Source: Haliotis cracherodii
Lineage: Eukaryota
Length of the DNA stretch: 64,000 bases
Assembly: GCF_022045235.1 (NCBI RefSeq)
Contig: NW_027266270.1
Coordinates: forward strand, 21,390,001-21,454,000
Direction: 5' to 3'
In this document: in pieces, positions 19,051 to 30,578 of the stretch
How positions within the stretch are numbered: the stretch's first letter is position 1
Layout: each line of letters opens with the position of its first letter
The notes under the pieces: model-generated
The model's database searches: none
What the model was told of the DNA's origin: nothing
What the model saw: the letters and a program-made list of their open reading frames with translations, nothing else
Made by a program: the position numbers and the translations under genes

Positions 19051-19056
19051 TTTATT
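19051..19056 (-). promoter_or_regulatory. Candidate polyadenylation signal (AATAAA) of the six-exon gene
   Basis: First AATAAA I found on the minus strand, about 500 nt downstream of the stop codon at 19555. Confidence 0.5.
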
Positions 19057-19554: not shown

Positions 19555-19622
19555 TTACAGGAACATGTTTACAAGAACTGAAACGATCAGTGACGTCATC
19601 GCAAAGGTCACAACTGCCCCAC
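19555..19622 (-). CDS. Exon 6: GPI-type signal (G)GAVVTFAMTSLIVSVLVNMFL*
   Basis: Acceptor tttttttgtcgttgcag. Small residues are followed by a hydrophobic tail ending at TAA. Confidence 0.85.
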
Positions 19623-22600
19623 CTGCAACGACAAAAAAACAAAACGTCATTACTTATAATTACTTAAAATAAAACATATAAAAACCGATGCTGACAATAT
19701 TTTGTTGTGTGATTGCAATGAACCCACATTTCGTGGCTGTTAATATTGCAGTAGAATATTCCCTATGTATTGTTTGCTTTTGCCCGTAACTAAGGTTTGC
19801 CTCAACAATGCGAGAGACGCGATGAGGCAATACAAAGTATGCAGTTAACAATACTATAATATACAGTTTATAAACGACAGTTTACCACAAGCTGGAGTAG
19901 TGAGTGCGTTCATCCTGGTCTCTACACCGGTAGCTAGGGTTGTTACATTGGAGGTGCCATCACAGGCCAGGGTTGTCTTCCCCTTTAAGCACGCGATGTA
20001 GGTCTGGGCGGCACTATGGACAACATAAAACGATGATAGCACGAATGACGCTGGAATAATATATACTACAATGTAACTAGTACGGCATTACATGAAGTTT
20101 TTTTTTGTATTTAGCAGTTCAGTGTTTTCATTCATGAGACATGATGTGTGTGGACGCAAATAGTGATTGAGTGAGTAAGGTTTTACGCTGCTTTTAGTAA
20201 TATTCCAGCAATATCACGCCGGGGGACACCAGAAATAGGCTTCACACATTGGTAGACGCAAATACGTTTCATAATCGAAAGAATGAAAATATATGATAGC
20301 ATTTTCGGACTAACAACATGTATATGTATATCATGCATATTTCTTCATGTACTTAATGGCTGCACGATTTGAGGTTATTTGTACTTATTTGGTTCACGAT
20401 AATACTTAATCGATAATTACATCAAAGAAAATGTTCAAAAAAACTTGTCGGGGGCGGTGCCGTGGCCAAGTGGTTAGCCAAGTTCGTCAGGCCGAAGACC
20501 CGGGTTCGATTCCCCACATAGGTACAATGTGTGAAGCTCATTTCTGGAGCTCCCCGTCGTGACATAGCAGGATTATTGCTTAAAGCGGCAATACACTATA
20601 CTCACTCACTCACTCACTCTAACGTGTCTTTTCCTTTCACACAGATACAAACCGTACATAATACAACATAATCCTACTCAAAAGGACCCACCATCTGCTA
20701 CTCTGATAAAAGGGATGTGGCTGATTTTATGTGTTAAAGATAATATATGTTTTCAGACACTGCTTCAAAACAAGCAATTTCGTACAGTTAACTTTCTTTT
20801 ACAGAATATCTGTTGTCATGCCATCAAGCAGTAAACGCTTTCATATATTCAAAGATATTACAGGTCCCCTACAAACATTCATATTTCAAATGATCGATTC
20901 ACTAGCTATATAGTATACTTTGTTTCACCCTTATCAAATGGCATTATGATATATTACCTGCAAACAGCTGCATCACCTGCGCTCTGGTCAGTCTTCCAGA
21001 ATTCTTTCTGACAAACACAGGTGTCCGTAAATGCTGGAAGTACACATACAAAGAAATTGCAGACAGACAAGAACATTAAAAGATGCCAAATGTATGTTGT
21101 ACCCTTCCATGCATCTCTTGTATAATCTTTTTCTTAGATATCTATTACATGTAGATTATATTAATGAGAACACCGTAGAGTATATATCTGATACATGCAT
21201 TTTGTAGAACACGTTAGATAACACCCACCAGTCTTATAGGTTATCACCTACCACACGATTTATTGTCAAATTATCTTTCCGCATATACCTTTTCCTATCA
21301 CCCTATGCAACATAAAATATTCCGTTTATCATCATTTTCACAGCCCAAACTCCACTCACATTTAGATCACATTGTTCATCAGGTAACTATTCATTTCAGC
21401 ATGTACACACTCCATTAACCACTCGGAATTAGAATAAAATCTGCAATATCAGCTTCGAATATTAAACTCCAAGATATAGCTCCTACTCAACTTTTCTCAT
21501 CTCCTCATTGGCAAATGGTAAAGCCAGAGGTAGACCTGACATTAACCAAACTTAAGAAATCCGATACTAACCAATTAATATACCAACAAGAATACCATCA
21601 ACTAAGAAGCAATTATGACACTTATAAATCTATATTTACAGATGGATCCAAGGATGGTGGTGCAGTTGCTAGTGCCACTGTCATTGGATCCAGAACAATC
21701 TCTTCACGTTTACCTGATAACAGTTCAATATTCACTGCAGAAGCAAACGCCATTTTTACAGCACTTAAATATATCGGTAATCAATCTAAACATAACCAAT
21801 TCATACTGTTTTCAGATTCTCTTTCATGCCTTCAGGCAATTAAAAATATGTCTTCAACACATCCACTTTTAATCCAAATTCTTGAGTTATTTAATGATCT
21901 TGCTACTGGCCAATATGACATCGTCTTTTGTTGGTTACCAAGCCATGTTGGTATCAAAGGTAACACAATGGCCGATGCTGCTGCTAAAGCAGCCCTCAAC
22001 AAATCTGTGACACCACTTCTGATCCCATACACTGATTTTAAACCCATGATTCGATCCTACATCCGAGATCTTATGCAACAGAAATGGGACGCCCAAGTAG
22101 GTATCAATAAATTACATGAAATTAAACCAAATATCGGATATACCTTCTTGGGGTGTCAGTCCAGATTTGAAGAGGTCATTATGCGACGATGTCGTATTGG
22201 CCACAGCAGATATACTCATGAATATTTACTAAAAGGTGAGGATCCTCCGTTTTGTATCCCTTGTGATGAGAGAATCACCGTCAAGCATGTCCTGCTTGAC
22301 TGTGTTGATTTTTCCATCACAAGGGATAAATATTTCAATGTAAAAACAATTAAGGACCTTTTTAATGATGTTAATTCTCGTTTAATATTATGTTTTTTTT
22401 AAAGAAATAGAACTTGTCCATAAATTTTGATGTGCTTAATGTATTATTCTATTAATTGGTAGTGCTAATTAATAACTTAGATTGTGAGTGGCTGTACCCT
22501 CGAGGGGGGTTGAAGTAGCGTAAAATTATTGTCCCCCTAGGAGGGTATGTAAGTCCCCAACCATTCGTAGTATTTTTATGCATACCAGACTTTTAAATCG

Positions 22601-25600
22601 TAGTATATTTGTTAGTTTTATTCAATGGCTAAACTTGCATATAATCGCCAGCGACTGAAGGGATGGTGTAAATCCTACCGGGATCCATGCAGGAAGCAAA
22701 GGCACTGTAAGTCCCCATGGTCCCTGGTGTGGTGATCTCCCTTTAGTTACTGACGATCTCTAGCCCATTTTTATATTGTGTTGTTCCTTACTACTTAATG
22801 CTTTTAACTGTTCTGCAACTAGTTTTAAATCTTATCTGTGATATTCTAGTTCTCATACTGTCCTTCGATGACAGATTTTTATAAAGTTTAAATATATGTA
22901 TATTTCATGTCTAATTTCTCGTCACGATATGGCCGAAATATTGCCGATGTGACGTAAAGCATTACCTCACTCACTCACTTACTCCATTAATCTTCTGTCT
23001 AATCATACTACCGCTCATACTTCACACTAGCTTACACGTATCTACATCTTTATTCAGCTCACGAAAGACGTTCCCATTTAAGCCTGTGGCCAGGCCCTTT
23101 AGCATCTTAAGTGCATTCCTTCTATGTTACGCTGACCGCTCAACACTTTATCCACGTTGCCACTTTAACCATATCATCATTCTAATTCTAAAACCGTCCA
23201 ATGATTTGTGTACATAAACGTCCATCAACACATCGTCATTGCTCATTCAACCAAGTATGTATAACTTGTAAACTGCAATGATCACTTCATGGTAATGCAA
23301 TCAAACTCATCAAACTATAACTCCTCCCGTCTGTCTGCCAGTTCCTTTGCCCAATACCTCAAATACACATCTTTGCTATCTATATGATCCATTTTTATCC
23401 GTCTACATTATACATTGTTTGGATGACAAGGCACCAGCAGTTGTCTGTGGTCTCGTCGGGGATCCCTCCTATTCCTCTGACCAATCTGTCATAGACTAAT
23501 TAAATCTACGCAGTTTATATTTTACTGCAGTATCAACACATACATAATACAACCTACATGCACTACAATTATCTCCGGTATAATCCGTCTCTATGGACCC
23601 GGCGTCAGCAGCAGGTAGAGGACAACCGGCGTTTCCCTTTGCAGAGGTCTCCAGACAGGTCAGGTACATCTTCAGATCACTGCGAAAAAGAAACAATTGA
23701 TTCGCCTGAACATTGTACTTGAGCAACCCGTAGATGCATATGTGTATAGTTATTCTTCTCGCTATATGGATGAAATACTGAATGTGAAATAAACAAAATA
23801 TTGACTAACTCACATGTTTCGCAAATGCAAGTTCCAGTTGTCTGTAGTAGAAAGCAGTGTGCATACAACCCTTACGCGACCTCATATCACAAACTGAAGG
23901 TACATTTTATACATCTATTGAGATCTGGTTTACTACTTTGTGAAGCTTTCCGGTGTTCATCAACCAAAGTTTCGTAATTCGAAGATTATCCCAAGATCAG
24001 GGATACCTTCAATAGTCACTACAATTGAAAATTGTGAAAAAATACGTGATATGATTACCGCACGTCAAATCGCCTATTTTGTCATTGATTCAATTAATGT
24101 GTACAGTTAATCGTCATCACTGTAATGGTAATACACTGCGTGAAGCCTGTGGTTGAGTATGCAGCATACTTTTACGGACTTCACGAGTTCATTTCATCTT
24201 TTAGTTTGTACTTATGGCTTGTATTCATTGCTATATACTAGTATCACGGAAACGTTATTAAATTCATTTGGTTGGTTGCTGTATCTGTTATAAATGTTGT
24301 TGTAGAAATATGAACTAAGCATGCACCTGTACATCATATTAGCTTTTCACTCATTTTACAAATGATAACTAAAGTATGATGTGCAAATAATATGTCTTGT
24401 AAAAGGACTTACTCGCATTTCGCACCGGCCGCGGGTGTGCCATATGTAGATTTACAAGAGTCACACGTGTCTGCCGACGTTGGCGAAAAGTAAACTGGAA
24501 AAGAATGTTACATGAGTTTTAGGCTGATAAAATGTGTATCAAATCACGAAATGCTCAGATCATGATTTTGTCAAAATGTTATGAATAATGTGGACACAAT
24601 TTATGGATAACAACTTCATGTAATAGCTCCGTTTCGGTACAGATCCTTTTCCGTTGCTTGATTGTGTCTACATTGTGGCAATCAACTTCTTTGAAATACC
24701 AATTGAACAATGTTATAAGTAGGTGGATTGAGATGTTTATTACCGAGGCTCACTGTATTCAGAACTAACATGCGCTTGTGCAGCATCATTAAACGCACAT
24801 AAAATGAACAGGATCACTGAACCGTTCACGCTTGTAGCCATAGTGGTAGTAAATGTACCTGATATCACTGATTGCATTTCCCTTCTTTCTTATTCAATAA
24901 CCAAACATTATAACACATCAAGGTATACACGACTTGGTTGATGCATGTCATCGATCCCAATTACCTGGATCGATGCTCATGATGTCAATCACTGGATTGT
25001 CTGGTCCGGACTCGATTATTTACAGACCGCTGTCATATATAGTTGGAATATTGCTGAGTGCGGCGTTAAACAACAAACCAACCAACCAATATGCCAAAGG
25101 CATATGTCTTGAGAACCATTATTATAAATTGTTACGATACGGTATCGAAACTGTTTTTTTAAATCAATGAGGTGTAGTATCCCAGGTTTTTGTTGAAGTT
25201 TCATTTCATACATAATGCCCTAACCTAAATACGTCACACTACGTATGAGAGCATCAAGTGTTCCTGTACAGTTTGATTTTCAGGTGCTTAGGATTTTGTA
25301 AAGAGCATTCAGCAAAGAAAATAGTCGTCATTTCTTTATTCTTCTATTTTTATTTGATTTGGTATACAAGGTATAATTCCTTTGTGCATTGTTGCAGTTA
25401 GCTCCTTGTTCTAATCTAATGTTTCAGTCTAATGTTTCAATGAAACTTATTACCTGTTTTTCTTACATTAAGCCAAAAGAATTTAAAGAATTCAATAGGG
25501 AAACCATCTTGTCCGGGACTGTTGTTGTTGTTTTTCATATATTTCACTGGGTTTATCCGATTTATCTACAAGGATATATCGCCTAAGTCAGACGTCTGAA

Positions 25601-28600
25601 CTTTGTTTGACAATAATTTGACGTCTTTGACAAGTTCTCCATTAGAGGAGCATAATTTCTGATGACAATTCTATTAGATATTGAAAGATCAGAAAACAAT
25701 GCCTCACTTATAGATTGAAAATCATCTCTCATTTTTCCGTCTAACTCTTCAAATTGATTTTTAAATCCTTTCATTTTTTAGGTAAGATGAAAATGATACA
25801 GACTTCCCTCATATTTTAATGAAGAATGCATTGTAACCCCCATTCACTTCTTCTTGTATTTTCCTCATCCTTTGAGTTATGTATATCTTGCACAGGAATG
25901 TTTTTACCCCATAAGTTCATGAACTCTTTTTTCGTTTATATTTCCCCACCAGCGCCCGACAGTTAGTCGAGATTATGTGAATTCTGTTATCCATTTTCCG
26001 CTAAAGGTTCATGGTAATAAGTTGGTTTTGTTTGGTCTTATGTGTTTGTGCAGAGCTTACTGAACTGGACATTTTCAAATACTTAAGAATTGACCTTCAC
26101 TTTGTGTGAGTTCATTGGAGTATGAACCTTCATAGAGTGAGGGCCAAACTGTATGAACGTCGGAGCTTGCGACGACGTTCATACAATGTTTGGCCCTCAC
26201 TCTATGAAGGTTCATACTCCAATGAACTCACACAAAGTGAAAGTCAATTCTTATAATTTTTATATCACAATTTCTTACCTCAAAGGATGTAGGCCAAGAT
26301 CTAAACACAATTTTATTTAATACGTGTGACTTCATGTTTACACTGACAGCCATACAACAACCAGCTATATCGCGGAGTAAAATAGTTCCTCAAAAAGAGA
26401 GGTGACATGGGCGTATGGATGCACAACTTGCTCTACAGAAACATCTTAAGCAGCACGTGTGTTCAAATCATATCCTCATTAGATGAGAAAGGTCTGTAAA
26501 GAACTACCTCAGTAAGTCAGTCACAATGACAGCGCGTCGTACAAGTACAAGACGTCAAAATGGCCGAAACGATAAACGTGACGGGAGAGATTTCAGAAGT
26601 TGTTAATGAACGTGTGGCGGTTACATGTGTTAGTCATCATTGATCAACTGGCCGATGATTGAAAGGTGAATAAAGATGCGTCAAACAGACACTAAGGTAA
26701 ATTCATAGATTGCTGGAGACGGTCAATGTCAGCCTAGGCACGGATCGGGTCGACACTACGATTGTTTAGATGTGCATTTCATCGGTTTTTAGGCCGCAGC
26801 GAGGATATTCGTGAACAATCATGCAGTCACCCTCTCTGATATTTCTCAATGTATACTGAAACGCTGAGACCAAGAATAAAGGTTCTAAATGATCAGAAAG
26901 AAACGCTTATTTGTGTTTTCGTGCTAGGGAATTCCCAGGGGTTTTCCCAGGAATGTGGAAGTAGTCCGTCAGTGTTTACGTCATTTCAAAAACACGGTCT
27001 CGTGAGAAACGTATGAACGTCAAATTGTGTCGTTCATACACTTATGAACGTCAATTTCGCGGTCATGTGACCGCTCTCTCGTCCAATGGAAAAGCCGTAT
27101 ATCGTGTAAACTTCAAATTAAAAAATTATATTGAAATAAATCAATTCAACATAGTGTTCAGAAGACAAAGAAAGGTAGCTTTGGTTGTGCATGAAGACTA
27201 TCCATATATCAGAACAATGTAGGCCCTAATGAACCCCAGTGGACCAGTGTCAAAATATATGACATGTGTCAATGGGATACAGTAGTAATAGTTTACGTAT
27301 TTTGGAATATAAGTACATCTACTACAAACAGTGAATTAGATGACACTAATACTGTGCTCGAGTAAGGCGTTAATTCATAGCGATCAGCATGTCCGACCGC
27401 CATCCGTTTTCGGAGCAGAACTCTTAAACCGTTGCGAATTTCTTGTTGAAACTTGCTATATATAGGGCCCTGTTCCTCAAGCCAACCTTAGGGCTAAGGT
27501 GATCGGAAGTTCTGAGATTTCAATCTTAAGCCTTAGTTAAGGGTAGCATACTGTTCTACGAAACAGCTAAGTTTAGCTGAAGTTACGATCAAAACCTCAG
27601 GTTGATCCTGCCCAACCTTAACTCACAATTCACAAGACCCGTGAAGATAAGGGATAGAGTCTGGACCAGACAATCCCGTGATTTACATCATGAGTATCGT
27701 TCCACGCAATTGGTGTGAGTGAACATTTAACATCGCATCAGCATTATTTCAGCCATAAAGCGACGAGACCAAGTTGATACATTCACAGATTGTTCATTAA
27801 TACAGAGTTATATTTAAACACAATTTATGAAACATACTTGAGCATACAATATTTAATACCAAGTCATGAAACAAGTTTGAGCATAAAAGTAACCAAAGCT
27901 AGGCCACCTCGCTGGAGATCATGGGGACTTACAGTACCTCTGGTTCCTGCATGATACCCAGCAGAATTAACGTCATCACTTCAGCTGCTGGTGGTTGTGC
28001 ACAATTGGGATACGATGACATGCATCAACCAACTCAGCGAACCTGACCATGCGATCCCGTTAGTCGCCTCTTACGACAAACAAAGTCGCCTTCTACGGCA
28101 AGCATGGGTTGCTGAAGACCTACCCCGGATCTTCACGGGTCAAACTGCAAATGTTTTACTTAGTGACGTAAATGGAATATGACCACAACCGACATTGATA
28201 CACATGTTTGAGAATTATCCCCCAATAATTCGACACTTTCAAGACATATGTGATGATCATACAAATTTATACAGTTGAGGCATGTTTCGTTTTCGTCTTG
28301 CTTTTCGTTCCGTTATTGGATTCATATCTTTGGAGAACTACTCCAATGTGTTGACGTCACATTATTTATTGTTTAGTGTGTTTTCCTTTAGGAGGAATTA
28401 AATCGAGCCCATAATCATATGTACACACAGATATCAAGCAACACATAGGCGTGCAAAGAAGGTTGTAAACAATGTGGTCGAAGTGCTCACCGTTTATGTT
28501 TAGAAATTATATTTGATGATTTTCATAAATCGGGACTCACAAATTATGTTAGAAATAGATAATAACGTCCCAAACTGTAATGCTTTTAACAAATGTCGAG

Positions 28601-30494
28601 TAATGGTTTCAGAAGACGATGTCGTACAACATTACGACTGCAACCTCAGCACTAGGTTTGGCACGCCTAGTTGAGATCGAGTTGAGGTTGCTTTGTGAAA
28701 CGGGCGTAACATCAGATTAAGCTTACCTTAATTCTAACCTCAGTGGTAAATGTTCGCCTTACCAATGGTTCTTTTAAGGAATGGGGCCAAGATCAGTCTT
28801 GTGCAGAGCTGGTGCCATTTCGATTTTTTAAAAAAAATTTAAACATATTTATGGAACAAGTTGGACCTATATCAAAATCAGGTTCCTGCTCGTTTCCGGA
28901 TCAGAATTTATACCTTTCAATGTTTCGATTTGAACACATTGCAACACAGATCAGTCTTGTGGTAAGCAAGTGCCTATTGATGATTTGGATTATTAATTAA
29001 ATTTTGGTATAATTTTAATATTGTTTTCATGACGACAAGACTGAAACTACAAATGGGGGTAGTGCTCGTTTCCGGAGCGGAACTCAAAAACTGTTGAATA
29101 TTTCCTGAATGATTGATTATTTGTTTGTTGTTTAACGCCGCACTCAGCAATATCCCAGATATATGACGGCGGTCTGTAAAAAATCGAGTCTGGACCAGAC
29201 AATCCCGTGGATGATATCACAAGTATCGATCCACGCAATTGGGATACGCAACTTTCTATACAGATCAGTCTTGTGGTAACATGGTACCTTTTGATAATTT
29301 TGGTTGGTTGGTTTGTTGTTTAACGCCGCACTCAGCAATATCCCAGCTATATGACGGCGGTTTGTAAATAATCGAATCTGGACCAGACAATCCAGTGATT
29401 AATGTCATGAGCATCGACCCACGCAATTGGGATCGATGACATGCATCAACCAAGTCAGCGAGCCTGACCAACCGATCCCGTAAGTCGCCTTTTACGACAT
29501 GCATAGTCACCTTTTACCGCAAGCATGGGTTGCTAAAGACCTATTCTACCCCGGAATCTTTACGAGGATGATAATTTTGGATTTGTGTTTATTTTGTATT
29601 GTTTTTCAGTTTCATAAAGATATTTTTGAGTTTTCTGAAAATGAGCGTAGTGTCACGTTGTCAGTTACTCAAACTTCTTCGTGCAACAATGCTGCTTTGT
29701 GATGGTTACCAATACAACGACAATGTGTCTGTTCATCTTTCATCTCTTTCATGCATTGAAGGTATATTAAGCAATTTCTAGATGATTGAGGTCCATTTTC
29801 TATCATTGTTCCTTGTTAAAAATGTTTTAAGAACCCACTGGGCACGTAGCGATCGCAATATATAAAGCAACCGACTTTCCAACATACTAACAGACTATTT
29901 GTAGTAAATAATGTACATTTACCTGAATTATATAACGTCTCCAAACATCTATGAATCAGACTTAATTTCTAGTATTCGTGATAGGCATAAATTATACTTC
30001 AATATCACGCCTAGCCACGACTGAGATTCAAGTATGAAGAAAACAACTGATAAATATTTTTGTTTAAAATTGGAACATCGAGTGTGCAAGATCATCGACA
30101 GTTCGTCATTAAACTGCCTAAAATTGCTGGGAACGGTAGAATTTGTCTTATTACTGTGACTTATATTATTCATAACTCCAGCTTGTCGTAAAAGGCGACT
30201 AACGGGATCAGGTGGTCAGGCTCGCTGACTTGGTTAATGCATGTCATCGATCCCAATTGCGTGGATCGATGCTCATGATATTAATCACGGGATTGTCTGG
30301 TCCAGACCCTATTATTTACAGACCGCCGTCATATAGCTGTAATATTGCCGAGTGCGGCGTTAAGCAACAAGCCAACCAACAACCAAATCATAACTCAAAA
30401 TGGATTACATGTTAAGTAACTGACGTAAATGTTAGATACCCAAGCAAATAAACAACTTACCCAGAAGAAGCACCATCACGCAAAATTTAAACAT
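19555..30494 (-). CDS. Six-exon gene for a 169-aa predicted GPI-anchored protein with two six-Cys (RGM-N/neuritin-like) domains; join(30461-30494, 24413-24494, 23558-23679, 20958-21033, 19886-20013, 19555-19622)
   Basis: Exons of 34+82+122+76+128+68 = 510 nt, all GT-AG, phases 1,2,1,2,1, no internal stops. Protein: MFKFCVMVLLLVYFSPTSADTCDSCKSTYGTPAAGAKCDDLKMYLTCLETSAKGNAGCPLPAADAGSIETDYTGDNCSASFTDTCVCQKEFWKTDQSAGDAAVCSAAQTYIACLKGKTTLACDGTSNVTTLATGVETRMNALTTPACGGAVVTFAMTSLIVSVLVNMFL*. Confidence 0.88.
19886..20013 (-). CDS. Exon 5: second half of domain 2
   Basis: ttgtccatag|T GCC GCC...TGT G|gtaaac; AAQTYIACLKGKTTLACDG...PAC. Confidence 0.88.
20163..20253 (-). mobile_element. 5'-truncated SINE family A with TSD gacgcaaata
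   Basis: Tail plus core, with gacgcaaata repeated on both sides. Confidence 0.8.
20449..20619 (+). mobile_element. tRNA-derived SINE family A
   Basis: ggggcggtgccgtggccaagtggtta...gacccgggttcgattcccc...(ctca)n. Confidence 0.88.
20958..21033 (-). CDS. Exon 4: first half of domain 2
   Basis: gtacttccag|CA TTT ACG GAC ACC TGT GTT TGT...TGC AG|gtaat; FTDTCVCQKEFWKTDQSAGDAAVC. Confidence 0.88.
21419..22980 (+). mobile_element. 5'-truncated I/Nimb-group LINE (RNase H + C-terminal Cys/His motif + 3' UTR) in intron 3, 10-bp TSD
   Basis: IFTDGSK, SIFTAE, FSDSLS and WLPSHVGIKGNTMAD (RNase H), then CIPC..TVKHVLLDC. (ctca)n tail. TSD actccattaa at 21409-21418 and 22981-22990. Confidence 0.93.
23558..23679 (-). 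CDS. Exon 3: second half of domain 1
   Basis: ttctttttcgcag|T GAT CTG AAG...GCA T|gtaggt; DLKMYLTCLETSAKGNAGC...DNCSA. Confidence 0.88.
24413..24494 (-). CDS. Exon 2: end of signal peptide and first half of domain 1
   Basis: ttcttttccag|TT TAC TTT...TGC GA|gtaagt; VYFSPTSADTCDSCKSTYGTPAAGAKC. Confidence 0.88.
26084..27130. mobile_element. Non-autonomous element beginning with a ~79-bp-arm hairpin (Crypton-like)
   Basis: Near-perfect palindrome at 26084-26253, then ttttatatcac. The hairpin core (tatgaacgtc) recurs at 27011-27052, followed by gtcatgtgac. The right boundary is approximate. Confidence 0.55.
27466..28788. mobile_element. Degenerate MITE (GGCCC termini) with nested SINE and LINE insertions
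   Basis: ggccctgttcctcaa ... taaggaatggggcc, with internal cttaac/gttaag short repeats near both ends. Confidence 0.45.
27713..28000 (-). mobile_element. Nimb LINE 3' UTR and tail inserted into a family-B SINE
   Basis: Matches 22650-22980 in reverse (ggggacttacagt, ttcctgcatg, tail). It splits a SINE at a duplicated caattgg. Confidence 0.7.
29119..30386. mobile_element. Three family-B SINEs in intron 1 (about 29119-29250 -, 29301-29567 -, 30178-30386 +); another at 24931-25088 +
   Basis: Each matches the family-B consensus and generates spurious 'MVRLADLVDACHRSQLRGS' ORFs. Confidence 0.88.
30461..30494 (-). CDS. Exon 1 (coding part): signal peptide start MFKFCVMVLLL
   Basis: ccagtcATGTTT...CTG G|gtaagt, preceded by a short 5' UTR and a TATA box. 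Confidence 0.82.
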
Positions 30495-30545: not shown

Positions 30546-30578
30546 TGCGAATGACATCAGTGCGTCCCCGTATTTATA
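30546..30578 (-). promoter_or_regulatory. Core promoter: TATAAATA (30578-30571) with an Inr-like TCATTC about 26 nt downstream
   Basis: Canonical TATA box 84 nt upstream of the ATG at 30494. Confidence 0.7.

What the first reader, a model, noticed from the sequence alone, without database searches (positions are those of the whole stretch)
19555..30494. Hidden six-exon gene: predicted GPI-anchored protein with two RGM-N-like domains and no vWD domain (possible BMP co-receptor or decoy)
Seen: TATA box, signal peptide (likely cleaved after PTSA), two six-Cys repeats (C-x2-C-x12-C-x8-C-x10-C-x18-C and C-x1-C-x16-C-x8-C-x8-C-x24-C), two N-glycosylation sequons, a C-G-G-A plus hydrophobic tail, and a polyA signal. 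There are no stops, although the introns are full of transposons. Established: the N-terminal domain of RGM/hemojuvelin is a disulfide-bonded three-helix bundle that binds BMP ligands, and RGMs also carry a vWD domain and a GPI anchor. By eye, against RGMA as recalled from memory: CQKEFWKT ~ CNSEFWSA; CSAAQTYIAC ~ CAALRSYALC; TTLACDG ~ TARTCRG; GVETRM and SIETDYTGDNCS ~ GIEDLMSQHNCS. Inference: a minimal bivalent RGM-N (or neuritin-like) surface protein that could bind dimeric BMP/TGF-beta ligands. I do not know this architecture as a described family.
Basis: partly seen in the sequence, partly recalled or inferred. Interest (0 to 1): 0.85.

Follow-up and report, generated by a model that had tools for sequence, protein, structure and literature searches.

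The report
Truncated abalone RGM-N-like repeat gene
An apparently unannotated six-exon gene in what is inferred to be the black abalone genome encodes a small secreted, probably lipid-anchored protein made of two disulfide-locked three-helix modules that distantly resemble the BMP-binding head of repulsive guidance molecules; it is a shortened copy from a large abalone-only gene family, and nothing yet shows that it binds BMPs.

Summary
On the minus strand, six GT-AG exons (ATG 30494, stop 19555-19557) give a 169-aa reading frame. It has a signal peptide, two six-Cys modules with exactly the reported spacings, two sequons and a hydrophobic C-terminal tail. The exons map in order onto RefSeq proteins of four Haliotis species.

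The genome is inferred to be Haliotis cracherodii. The gene belongs to a tandemly expanded family seen only in Haliotis, with at least 102 module exons in this genome and proteins of 2 to 55 modules. RefSeq names them only "mucin-like", "uncharacterized" and the like.

The window copy is a recent duplicate, 6% diverged from a paralog 200 kb away. It lost 3.35 kb holding the later modules, and stayed in frame.

Three independent tests support an RGM_N-like module:
- Pfam RGM_N is the commonest hit in the family, though always below its cut-off.
- A family HMM scores the abalone's genuine RGM at 24.8 bits; 0 of 20,000 shuffles reach that.
- RGMB's N-domain ranks first of 48,161 PDB chains against an AlphaFold model (Z 7.6).

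The BMP co-receptor reading is unsupported. The ligand-contact Arg, Leu and His are not conserved, and the family diversifies fast (dN/dS about 1.8).

No RNA evidence could be obtained. The scan noted similar readings elsewhere in this genome.

The parts
30573..30578 (-). TATAAA box, 84 nt upstream of the ATG
   Evidence: Pattern scan and sequence read. Promoter function is inferred.
30461..30494 (-). Exon 1 coding part: ATG plus the first 11 codons of the signal peptide; GTAAGT donor; phase-1 intron
   Evidence: Maps to residues 1-11 of XP_067655477.1.
24413..24494 (-). Exon 2: end of the signal peptide (…SPTSA, then DTC) and the first half of module 1 (C-x2-C-x12-C)
   Evidence: Paralog exons. 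Maps to residues 12-37 of XP_067655477.1.
23558..23679 (-). Exon 3: second half of module 1 (C-x10-C-x18-C) with the NCS sequon
   Evidence: 35 paralogous exons. Maps to residues 40-77.
20958..21033 (-). Exon 4: first half of module 2 (C-x-C-QKEFWKTD…C)
   Evidence: Maps to residues 78-99. Falls within the RGM_N match of relatives.
19886..20013 (-). Exon 5: second half of module 2 (C-x8-C-x24-C) with the NVT sequon; the part most similar to RGM_N
   Evidence: hhalign probability 72% and blastp E 3e-6 against the abalone RGM_N. 0 of 5000 Cys-preserving shuffles reach its score.
19555..19622 (-). Exon 6: G-G-A plus the hydrophobic C-terminal tail (candidate GPI-attachment signal) and the stop codon at 19555-19557
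   Evidence: It differs from the paralog's exon by an in-frame 3-bp gap. GPI anchoring is inferred, not computed.
19690..19698 (-). Breakpoint of a 3.35-kb deletion in intron 5, relative to the paralog at C7:21.21 Mb; the deletion removed the later modules
   Evidence: The blastn blocks window 21402-19694 = L025 5465-3726 and window 19694-19308 = L025 379-2.
19051..19056 (-).
   Evidence: Its use is untested.
21515..22402 (+). Retrotransposon fragment in intron 3 (not part of the gene product)
   Evidence: Pfam RNase_H E 3.6e-11 and RVT_3 E 1.7e-5.

Best explanation
The locus is an intact-looking six-exon gene in what is inferred to be the black abalone (Haliotis cracherodii) genome. It encodes a 169-aa precursor with four parts: a cleavable signal peptide, two ~60-residue six-cysteine modules, and a C-terminal hydrophobic signal of the GPI-attachment type.

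Each module is predicted to be a three-helix bundle, presumably locked by three disulfides, and is a distant relative of the N-terminal domain of repulsive guidance molecules (RGM_N).

The gene belongs to a tandemly expanded family found only in Haliotis, whose members carry 2 to 55 such modules. This copy is a recent duplicate that lost the later modules through a 3.35-kb deletion inside an intron. It stayed in frame because the flanking introns share phase 1.

The most likely mode of action is a membrane-tethered or shed extracellular protein that presents helical-bundle binding modules on the cell surface. The helix surfaces diversify between paralogs while the cysteine scaffold is kept. 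This points to recognition of variable partners, or a coat or adhesion role, rather than to conserved BMP co-reception.

Shown: exon structure, family membership, the RGM_N-like sequence signal, the predicted helical fold, the deletion, and the divergence pattern.

Inferred: secretion, GPI anchoring, disulfide pairing, surface-binding role, and expression.
For: Gene model:
- All splice sites and phases are consistent, with no internal stop.
- The exons are colinear with RefSeq XP_067655477.1 and with other Haliotis models.

Family:
- 67 and 35 paralogous exon hits for exons 5 and 3.
- At least 102 half-module exons at E<=0.01, almost all on contig C7 and C28.
- 14 representatives among 1.84 billion proteins; the nine whose source was looked up are all Haliotis.
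- 41 proteins among 5.8 billion, all Haliotis.
- Species: the contig lengths 36,859,700 and 3,354,372 equal those recorded for H. cracherodii proteins.

RGM_N relationship:
- In Pfam-wide scans RGM_N is the commonest hit, in 10 of 44 members. The best E is 0.0011, covering profile positions 6-64 of 70.
- An HMM of 138 family modules scores the genuine abalone RGM_N at 24.8 bits (E 1.2e-9 for one target). 0 of 20,000 Cys-preserving shuffles reach it; their maximum is 18.0.
- hhalign probability 72%. Exon 5 beats all 5000 shuffles.

Fold:
- The AF2 model of XP_067655477.1 has pLDDT 73.9 and three helices per module.
- An unbiased VIA search puts RGMB N-domain chain 6z3m_C at rank 1 of 48,161 (Z 7.6, rmsd 2.9 A, 64 of 74 residues).
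- RGM_ND is a three-helix bundle with three disulfides (PMC7354924).

Deletion and evolution:
- Searches show the deletion and the exon-6 gap.
- dN/dS is 1.78 (27 non-synonymous, 5 synonymous changes) with all 12 module Cys kept.
- Exons carry no frameshift, against 6.2 gaps per kb in introns.
Against:
- Its protein is not in the public protein collections searched, so it may be unexpressed.
- Exon and intron divergence from the paralog are equal (0.061 each), and dN/dS is not below 1. Apart from the kept frame and cysteines, there is no sign of purifying selection.
- All RGM_N matches are below Pfam's cut-off (14-17 bits against 24.2).
- Family profiles do not hit vertebrate RGM chains in PDB by sequence.
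- Z 7.6 is within the range that helical bundles reach by chance, according to the tool's own note.
- The models are of relatives, not of the window protein.
- The window's tail lost the polar Asp-His spacer present in the paralog, which could weaken GPI processing.
Confidence: 0.7

Rival explanations
1. One reading: a minimal bivalent RGM-N surface protein that binds dimeric BMP/TGF-beta ligands as a co-receptor or decoy.
For: - The modules are RGM_N-like, and RGM_ND alone is what binds BMP2/GDF5 (PMC7354924).
- The tail is of the GPI type, as in RGMs.
- The Gly of the RGD-loop is kept in about half of the family modules and in the window's module 2.
- The genome also holds an unusual tandem array of at least 18 BMP/Nodal-like ligand genes.
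Against: - The Arg, the pivot Leu and the stacking His of the RGM-ligand interface are replaced by Asp, Thr/Ser and Thr/Ala/Ser in the family consensus. They are absent from both window modules. The abalone's genuine RGM keeps a hydrophobic and an aromatic residue at the Leu and His positions.
- A conserved ligand would not be expected to drive a family of more than 100 modules with dN/dS of about 1.8.
- The bivalent form arose by deletion, not by design.
Confidence: 0.1
2. The window copy is a dead or dying gene: a recently duplicated, internally deleted relic that keeps an open frame only because too little time has passed.
For: - Its protein is absent from the searched protein collections, although other H. 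cracherodii family members are present.
- Exon divergence equals intron divergence at 0.061.
- dN/dS is 1.78 and not significantly different from 1.
- Two or more modules were lost.
- The Asp-His spacer of the tail was lost.
- No polyA signal lies within 499 nt of the stop.
Against: - All ten splice sites, the ATG, the frame and all 12 module cysteines are intact.
- The only exonic gap is 3 bp and in frame. From the intron gap rate, about three gaps, mostly frameshifting, would be expected.
- The deletion joins two phase-1 introns cleanly.
- My rough estimate is that these features would coincide by chance about 1% of the time. This is an inference, not a tool result.
Confidence: 0.3
3. The resemblance to RGM_N is convergence. 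Any small six-Cys helical bundle would look like this, and the family has an independent origin.
For: - All Pfam scores are below the cut-off.
- There are no sequence hits to vertebrate RGM chains.
- The first halves of the modules are not individually significant against the abalone RGM_N.
- Z 7.6 is ordinary for helical bundles.
- The family's module is split by a phase-2 intron, while the abalone RGM_N lies in one exon.
Against: - Three independent, unbiased searches converge on the same family out of 24,736 Pfam models and 48,161 chains.
- Shuffles that keep the cysteines in place never reach the observed score (0 of 20,000), so the signal lies in non-Cys residues (A-x-x-T-Y-x-x-C-[IL]-K-x-x-T-x-x-C-x-G).
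- The Pfam alignment spans the whole module in order (profile 6-64 of 70).
Confidence: 0.15

Closest known systems
Repulsive guidance molecules (RGMA, RGMB, RGMC/hemojuvelin, DRAG-1); Pfam RGM_N PF06535 plus RGM_C
   Same: - A signal peptide.
- A ~65-residue six-Cys module predicted as a three-helix bundle.
- The conserved core A-x-x-T-Y-x-x-C-x-K-x-x-T-x-x-C-x-G.
- A C-terminal tail of the GPI type.
- RGMB N-domain is the best structural match, and RGM_N is the best Pfam match.
   Different: - No RGM_C / partial vWD domain and no GDPH autocleavage site.
- Modules are repeated 2 to 55 times instead of occurring once.
- A phase-2 intron lies inside each module.
- The ligand-contact Arg, Leu and His are not conserved.
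- It is a lineage-specific tandem expansion, alongside a canonical RGM gene in the same genome.
Haliotis RefSeq proteins named 'mucin-22-like', 'serine-rich adhesin for platelets-like', 'G surface protein allelic form 156-like' or 'uncharacterized' (e.g. XP_067655477.1, XP_071099197.1, XP_071100328.1, XP_048242054.1)
   Same: The same family: colinear exons, the same signal peptide, the same modules and the same tail.
   Different: - The window copy has only two modules, because a 3.35-kb deletion removed the rest.
- It was not found among the deposited proteins.
- The RefSeq names are automatic and say nothing about function. No Pfam domain is recorded for any member.
Neuritin (NRN1/CPG15), Pfam PF15056
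   Same: A small, six-Cys, GPI-anchored extracellular protein. From my own recollection, it shares the C-x8-C-x7-C spacing.
   Different: The NRN1 model matched no family exon in a six-frame search of the whole genome (best E 5.2, at unrelated sites). It also does not appear in the Pfam scans of 44 family proteins.
GFR-alpha / GAS1 (GDNF receptor-type domains)
   Same: The architecture in concept: tandem all-alpha, disulfide-rich modules on a GPI anchor that, in GFR-alpha, bind TGF-beta-superfamily-related ligands (established knowledge).
   Different: Those domains have about ten Cys and are larger. No Pfam match to the GDNF/GAS1 domain appeared in any scan.

Membership tests
RGM family (Pfam RGM_N + RGM_C) | RGM_N domain scoring above the Pfam gathering cut-off (24.2 bits) | tested here: not met
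   Single window exons give no hit. Full-length relatives score 14-17 bits (E 0.001-0.05). RGM_N is the commonest hit in the family, in 10 of 44 members.
RGM family (Pfam RGM_N + RGM_C) | Three-helix bundle with six Cys (three disulfides) | tested here: met
   There are six Cys per module. The AF2 model of a relative shows three helices per module. RGMB_ND is rank 1 in the structural search. The disulfide pairing itself was not checked.
RGM family (Pfam RGM_N + RGM_C) | C-terminal RGM_C / partial vWD domain with the GDPH autocleavage site | tested here: not met
   The 169-aa product ends 22 residues after module 2. No family protein has such a domain. The genuine abalone RGM does have GDPH.
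RGM family (Pfam RGM_N + RGM_C) | BMP/GDF-contact residues of the alpha2-alpha3 loop and helix alpha3 (RGMB Arg100, Gly101, Leu103, His106) | tested here: not met
   The family reads D-G-T-T-T-V-T after Cys5. The window modules read PLPAADA and DGTSNVT. Only the Gly is shared (residues from PMC7354924).
RGM family (Pfam RGM_N + RGM_C) | GPI anchor | tested here: inconclusive
   The C-terminus is C-G-G-A plus a 20-residue hydrophobic end with no cytoplasmic tail. No GPI predictor was available, and the polar spacer is weaker than in the paralog.
Haliotis RGM_N-like repeat family (undescribed; RefSeq 'mucin-22-like' etc.) | Colinear signal peptide, six-Cys modules each split by a phase-2 intron, and the conserved hydrophobic tail | tested here: met
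   Exon-by-exon matches to paralogs at E 1e-16 to 1e-20, and colinear mapping on XP_067655477.1.
Neuritin (PF15056) | Match to the NRN1 profile | tested here: not met
   No family locus is among the genome-wide hits, and NRN1 is absent from the Pfam scans.
GDNF/GAS1 domain and DUF19 | Match to the Pfam profile | tested here: not met
   Neither appears among the Pfam hits at E<=1 to 10.

The most novel reading that the evidence does not exclude
Abalone turned the ligand-binding head of RGM into a free-standing, repeatable module and expanded it into a family of over a hundred modules on GPI-anchored proteins. These proteins would trap or present TGF-beta-superfamily ligands. One possible partner is the unusual tandem array of at least 18 BMP/Nodal-like ligand genes on contig C12 of the same genome, which would make this a co-expanded ligand and decoy system. 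The two-module window gene would then be a minimal bivalent trap matched to a dimeric ligand.
Probability: 0.1. Interest if true: 0.8.

Novelty: new variant of a known kind. Interest (0 to 1): 0.5.

Why it matters
RGM_N is known essentially as the single N-terminal head of RGM co-receptors. Here the same kind of module appears to have been freed from its vWD partner and repeated up to 55 times. It has been amplified into a chromosome-scale tandem family in one gastropod genus, under names in RefSeq that hide this.

If the homology holds, it gives three things:
- A natural library of diversified RGM_N scaffolds.
- A case study of domain release and expansion.
- A testable question: did ligand binding to TGF-beta-family proteins survive, or was it replaced?

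For genome annotation, it shows a probably unannotated gene and a family that deserves a profile of its own.

If the window copy is merely a decaying duplicate, the family-level point still stands.

Tried and rejected
- **Joined model.** The spliced 169-aa model was not sent to any search, fold or complex tool. Searches were done exon by exon by reference, and RefSeq relatives stood in for the whole protein. Local scripts joined the exons only to count length, Cys spacing, hydropathy and substitutions.
- **Pfam on single exons.** Nothing relevant.
- **The search for homologous proteins with the exon-3 open frame.** No candidate.
- **PDB sequence searches with family profiles.** Only chance CDGSH and beta-helix hits; no RGM chain.
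- **Foldseek with the whole five-module model.** Only generic helical repeats, E > 0.1.
- **ESM Atlas.** No usable hit.
- **Second AF2 job.** The 136-aa relative gave pLDDT 54. It was too poor to search with, though it again showed three helices in the module.
- **Complex prediction.** Abalone BMP2/4 dimer with module 2 of XP_067655477.1 gave no verdict, which is neither support nor evidence against.
- **Neuritin profile.** No match.
- **Long open frames around paralog exons.** These are chance read-through into introns, not fused exons.
- **Literature.** Searches for the family, its LOC identifiers, or abalone plus RGM found nothing relevant.
- **Earlier scan note s1-826364.** The locus at C7, about 34.35 Mb, does not match this family's HMMs; the best score is 10 bits.
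Full report
**1. The observation**

I read the minus strand at each proposed exon and rebuilt the model in a script. The exons are:
- 30494-30461
- 24494-24413
- 23679-23558
- 21033-20958
- 20013-19886
- 19622-19555

Every intron starts with GT and ends with a pyrimidine tract plus AG. The phases are 1,2,1,2,1. The CDS is 510 nt, giving 169 residues and one terminal stop.

TATAAA lies 84 nt upstream of the ATG. The N-terminus has one Lys, an 11-residue hydrophobic core, then S-P-T-S-A before D-T-C. The C-terminus is C-G-G-A followed by a hydrophobic end.

The introns hold an RNase H / RT-like ORF and several SINE-like copies.

One item fails. There is no canonical polyA signal near the stop; the first AATAAA is 499 nt downstream, at 19056.

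**2. It is a gene of a large family, not a chance frame**

Searching the window's own assembly with exons 5 and 3 gave 67 and 35 exon-sized hits. Nearly all have open frames. They cluster on contig C7 (5.6, 16.7, 20.9-21.4, 24.5-25.0 and 28.9-29.5 Mb) and on C28. A 28-sequence profile of the exon-5 type (A1) finds at least 102 such exons at E<=0.01, of which only a handful have stops.

The same profile, run against 1.84 billion representative proteins, found just 14. The nine whose source I looked up are all Haliotis RefSeq proteins. A word-based search of 5.8 billion proteins found 41, all from H. asinina, H. rufescens, H. cracherodii or H. rubra. None has a recorded Pfam domain. Their automatic names include 'mucin-22-like', 'serine-rich adhesin for platelets-like', 'G surface protein allelic form 156-like' and 'antifreeze protein Maxi-like'. 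They carry 2 to 55 modules.

Contigs C7 and C28 are 36,859,700 and 3,354,372 bases long. These equal the contig lengths recorded for H. cracherodii proteins, so the window is inferred to be black abalone.

Taken one by one, the window's six exons map in order onto XP_067655477.1:
- e1 to 1-11
- e2 to 12-37
- e3 to 40-77
- e4 to 78-99
- e5 to 104-145
- e6 to 351-367

Independent gene models therefore support four of the five junctions directly. The fifth junction joins module 2 straight to the tail exon.

**3. Why this copy has only two modules**

The nearest paralog lies 200 kb away (locus L025). It aligns with the window through exons and introns alike at 88-92% identity. The alignment jumps from L025 3726 to L025 379 at window position ~19694. 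The skipped 3.35 kb holds further module exons in the paralog, and annotated relatives have four or five modules.

The two-module form is therefore a recent internal deletion. It stays in frame because both flanking introns are phase 1.

Against the paralog:
- Exon mismatch is 0.061, the same as intron mismatch.
- dN/dS is 1.78, from 27 non-synonymous and 5 synonymous changes. It is not significantly above 1.
- All 12 module cysteines are kept.
- The only exonic gap is 3 bp and in frame, against 6.2 gaps per kb in introns.

This pattern fits a young gene under diversifying or relaxed selection with the scaffold kept. It does not exclude a very young pseudogene.

The protein was not found in the public collections, and no RNA data could be obtained.

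**4. What the module is**

Single exons gave no Pfam hit. Full-length relatives did. RGM_N (PF06535) is the only hit, or the top hit, for XP_067655477.1 (E 0.0054, residues 84-138 on profile 6-64 of 70) and for two others. Across 44 family proteins it is the commonest family, in 10 members with a best E of 0.0011. All of these scores are below the 24.2-bit cut-off.

The genome has a genuine RGM, which gives a clean target:
- RGM_N scores 64.9 bits at C1:79994281-79994481.
- A GDPH site follows the domain.
- Its best PDB match is RGMB chain 6z3m_C.

Against that domain I obtained the following:
- The exon-5 profile gives hhalign probability 72%.
- Exon 5 alone gives blastp E 3e-6.
- Exon 5 beats all 5000 shuffles that keep the cysteines fixed. 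Exon 3 is matched or beaten by only 8 of 5000. The two first-half exons are not significant alone.
- An HMM built from 138 distinct modules cut from the database proteins scores the abalone RGM_N at 24.8 bits (E 1.2e-9 for one target). The best of 20,000 Cys-preserving shuffles reaches 18.0.

AlphaFold2 on XP_067655477.1 with four relatives gave pLDDT 73.9 and three helices per module. Foldseek on the whole five-module model was uninformative. The exhaustive VIA search of 48,161 chains put RGMB's N-domain (6z3m_C) first, with Z 7.6, rmsd 2.9 A and 64 of 74 residues aligned. Z 7.6 alone is ordinary for a helical bundle.

RGM_ND is described as a bundle of three helices held by three disulfides (PMC7354924).

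Three unbiased searches landing on the same family is the real argument. I put the RGM_N-like reading at about 85%.

The neuritin profile found nothing.

**5. Does it work like RGM?**

In RGMB-GDF5 and RGM-BMP2 complexes, the ligand is held by the alpha2-alpha3 'RGD loop' and helix alpha3. The residues involved are Arg100, Gly101, the pivot Leu103 and His106 (PMC7354924). These sit at positions +1, +2, +4 and +7 after the fifth Cys.
- The genuine abalone RGM keeps Gly, has Ile at the Leu position and Tyr at the His position.
- The family consensus there is D-G-T-T-T-V-T.
- The window's modules read PLPAADA and DGTSNVT.

Only the Gly survives. Add a canonical RGM elsewhere in the genome, the fast diversification, and the accidental origin of the two-module form, and the co-receptor or decoy reading drops to about 10%. 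A predicted-complex job with the abalone BMP2/4 dimer gave no verdict, and I do not count it either way.

My best mechanistic statement is a GPI-tethered or shed surface protein that displays diversified helical-bundle binding modules. The partners are unknown.

**6. Limits**

Whole-protein inferences rest on relatives that are 58-77% identical to the window's exons 2-5. Secretion and GPI anchoring are rule-of-thumb readings. Expression is untested.

**7. Earlier scan notes**

The scan's first readers noted RGM-N/neuritin-like readings elsewhere in this genome (s1-834465, s1-826364). The second locus does not match this family's HMMs. I did not test the first.

**8. Verdict**

I class it as a new variant of a known kind, of moderate interest.

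Noticed in passing
G000 C12:80168931-80246829 (loci L046-L051): At least 18 tandem copies, about 4.19 kb apart, of a gene whose last exon encodes a TGF-beta-family mature domain (about 115 bits each to PF00019, with 313-aa open frames). The best PDB sequence match is a Nodal/BMP2 chimera. This is an unusual ligand-gene array.
   Followed up: partly
G000 C1:79994281-79994481 (L037:1351-1731, minus strand): The canonical RGM gene of this genome. RGM_N scores 64.9 bits in a single exon, followed by the GDPH autocleavage motif. The best PDB match is RGMB chain 6z3m_C.
   Followed up: yes
G000 C45:28724406-28724711 (L044:1501-1830, minus strand): BMP2/4 orthologue mature domain, 209.6 bits to human BMP2.
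   Followed up: partly
window 21515-22402 (+): A 295-aa ORF with RNase H (E 3.6e-11) and RVT_3 matches, inside intron 3. It is a retrotransposon fragment.
   Followed up: partly
window 24931-25039, 28013-28122, 29110-29543, 30181-30385: Several copies, direct and inverted and 85-92% alike, of a 110-200 nt SINE-like element in introns 1 and 2.
   Followed up: no
G000 C28:233587-233706 (L040) and C5:10787193-10787315 / 10823934-10824056 (L038, L039): Exon-sized, sub-threshold RGM_N matches (about 20 bits, profile positions 28-69) outside the family's clusters. L040 reads like the second half of a six-Cys helical module. They might be further RGM_N-like genes.
   Followed up: no
G000 C7:21206000-21215999 (L025): The nearest paralog, also not found among deposited proteins. 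It has the same exon order, plus further module exons in the 3.35 kb that the window copy lacks.
   Followed up: partly
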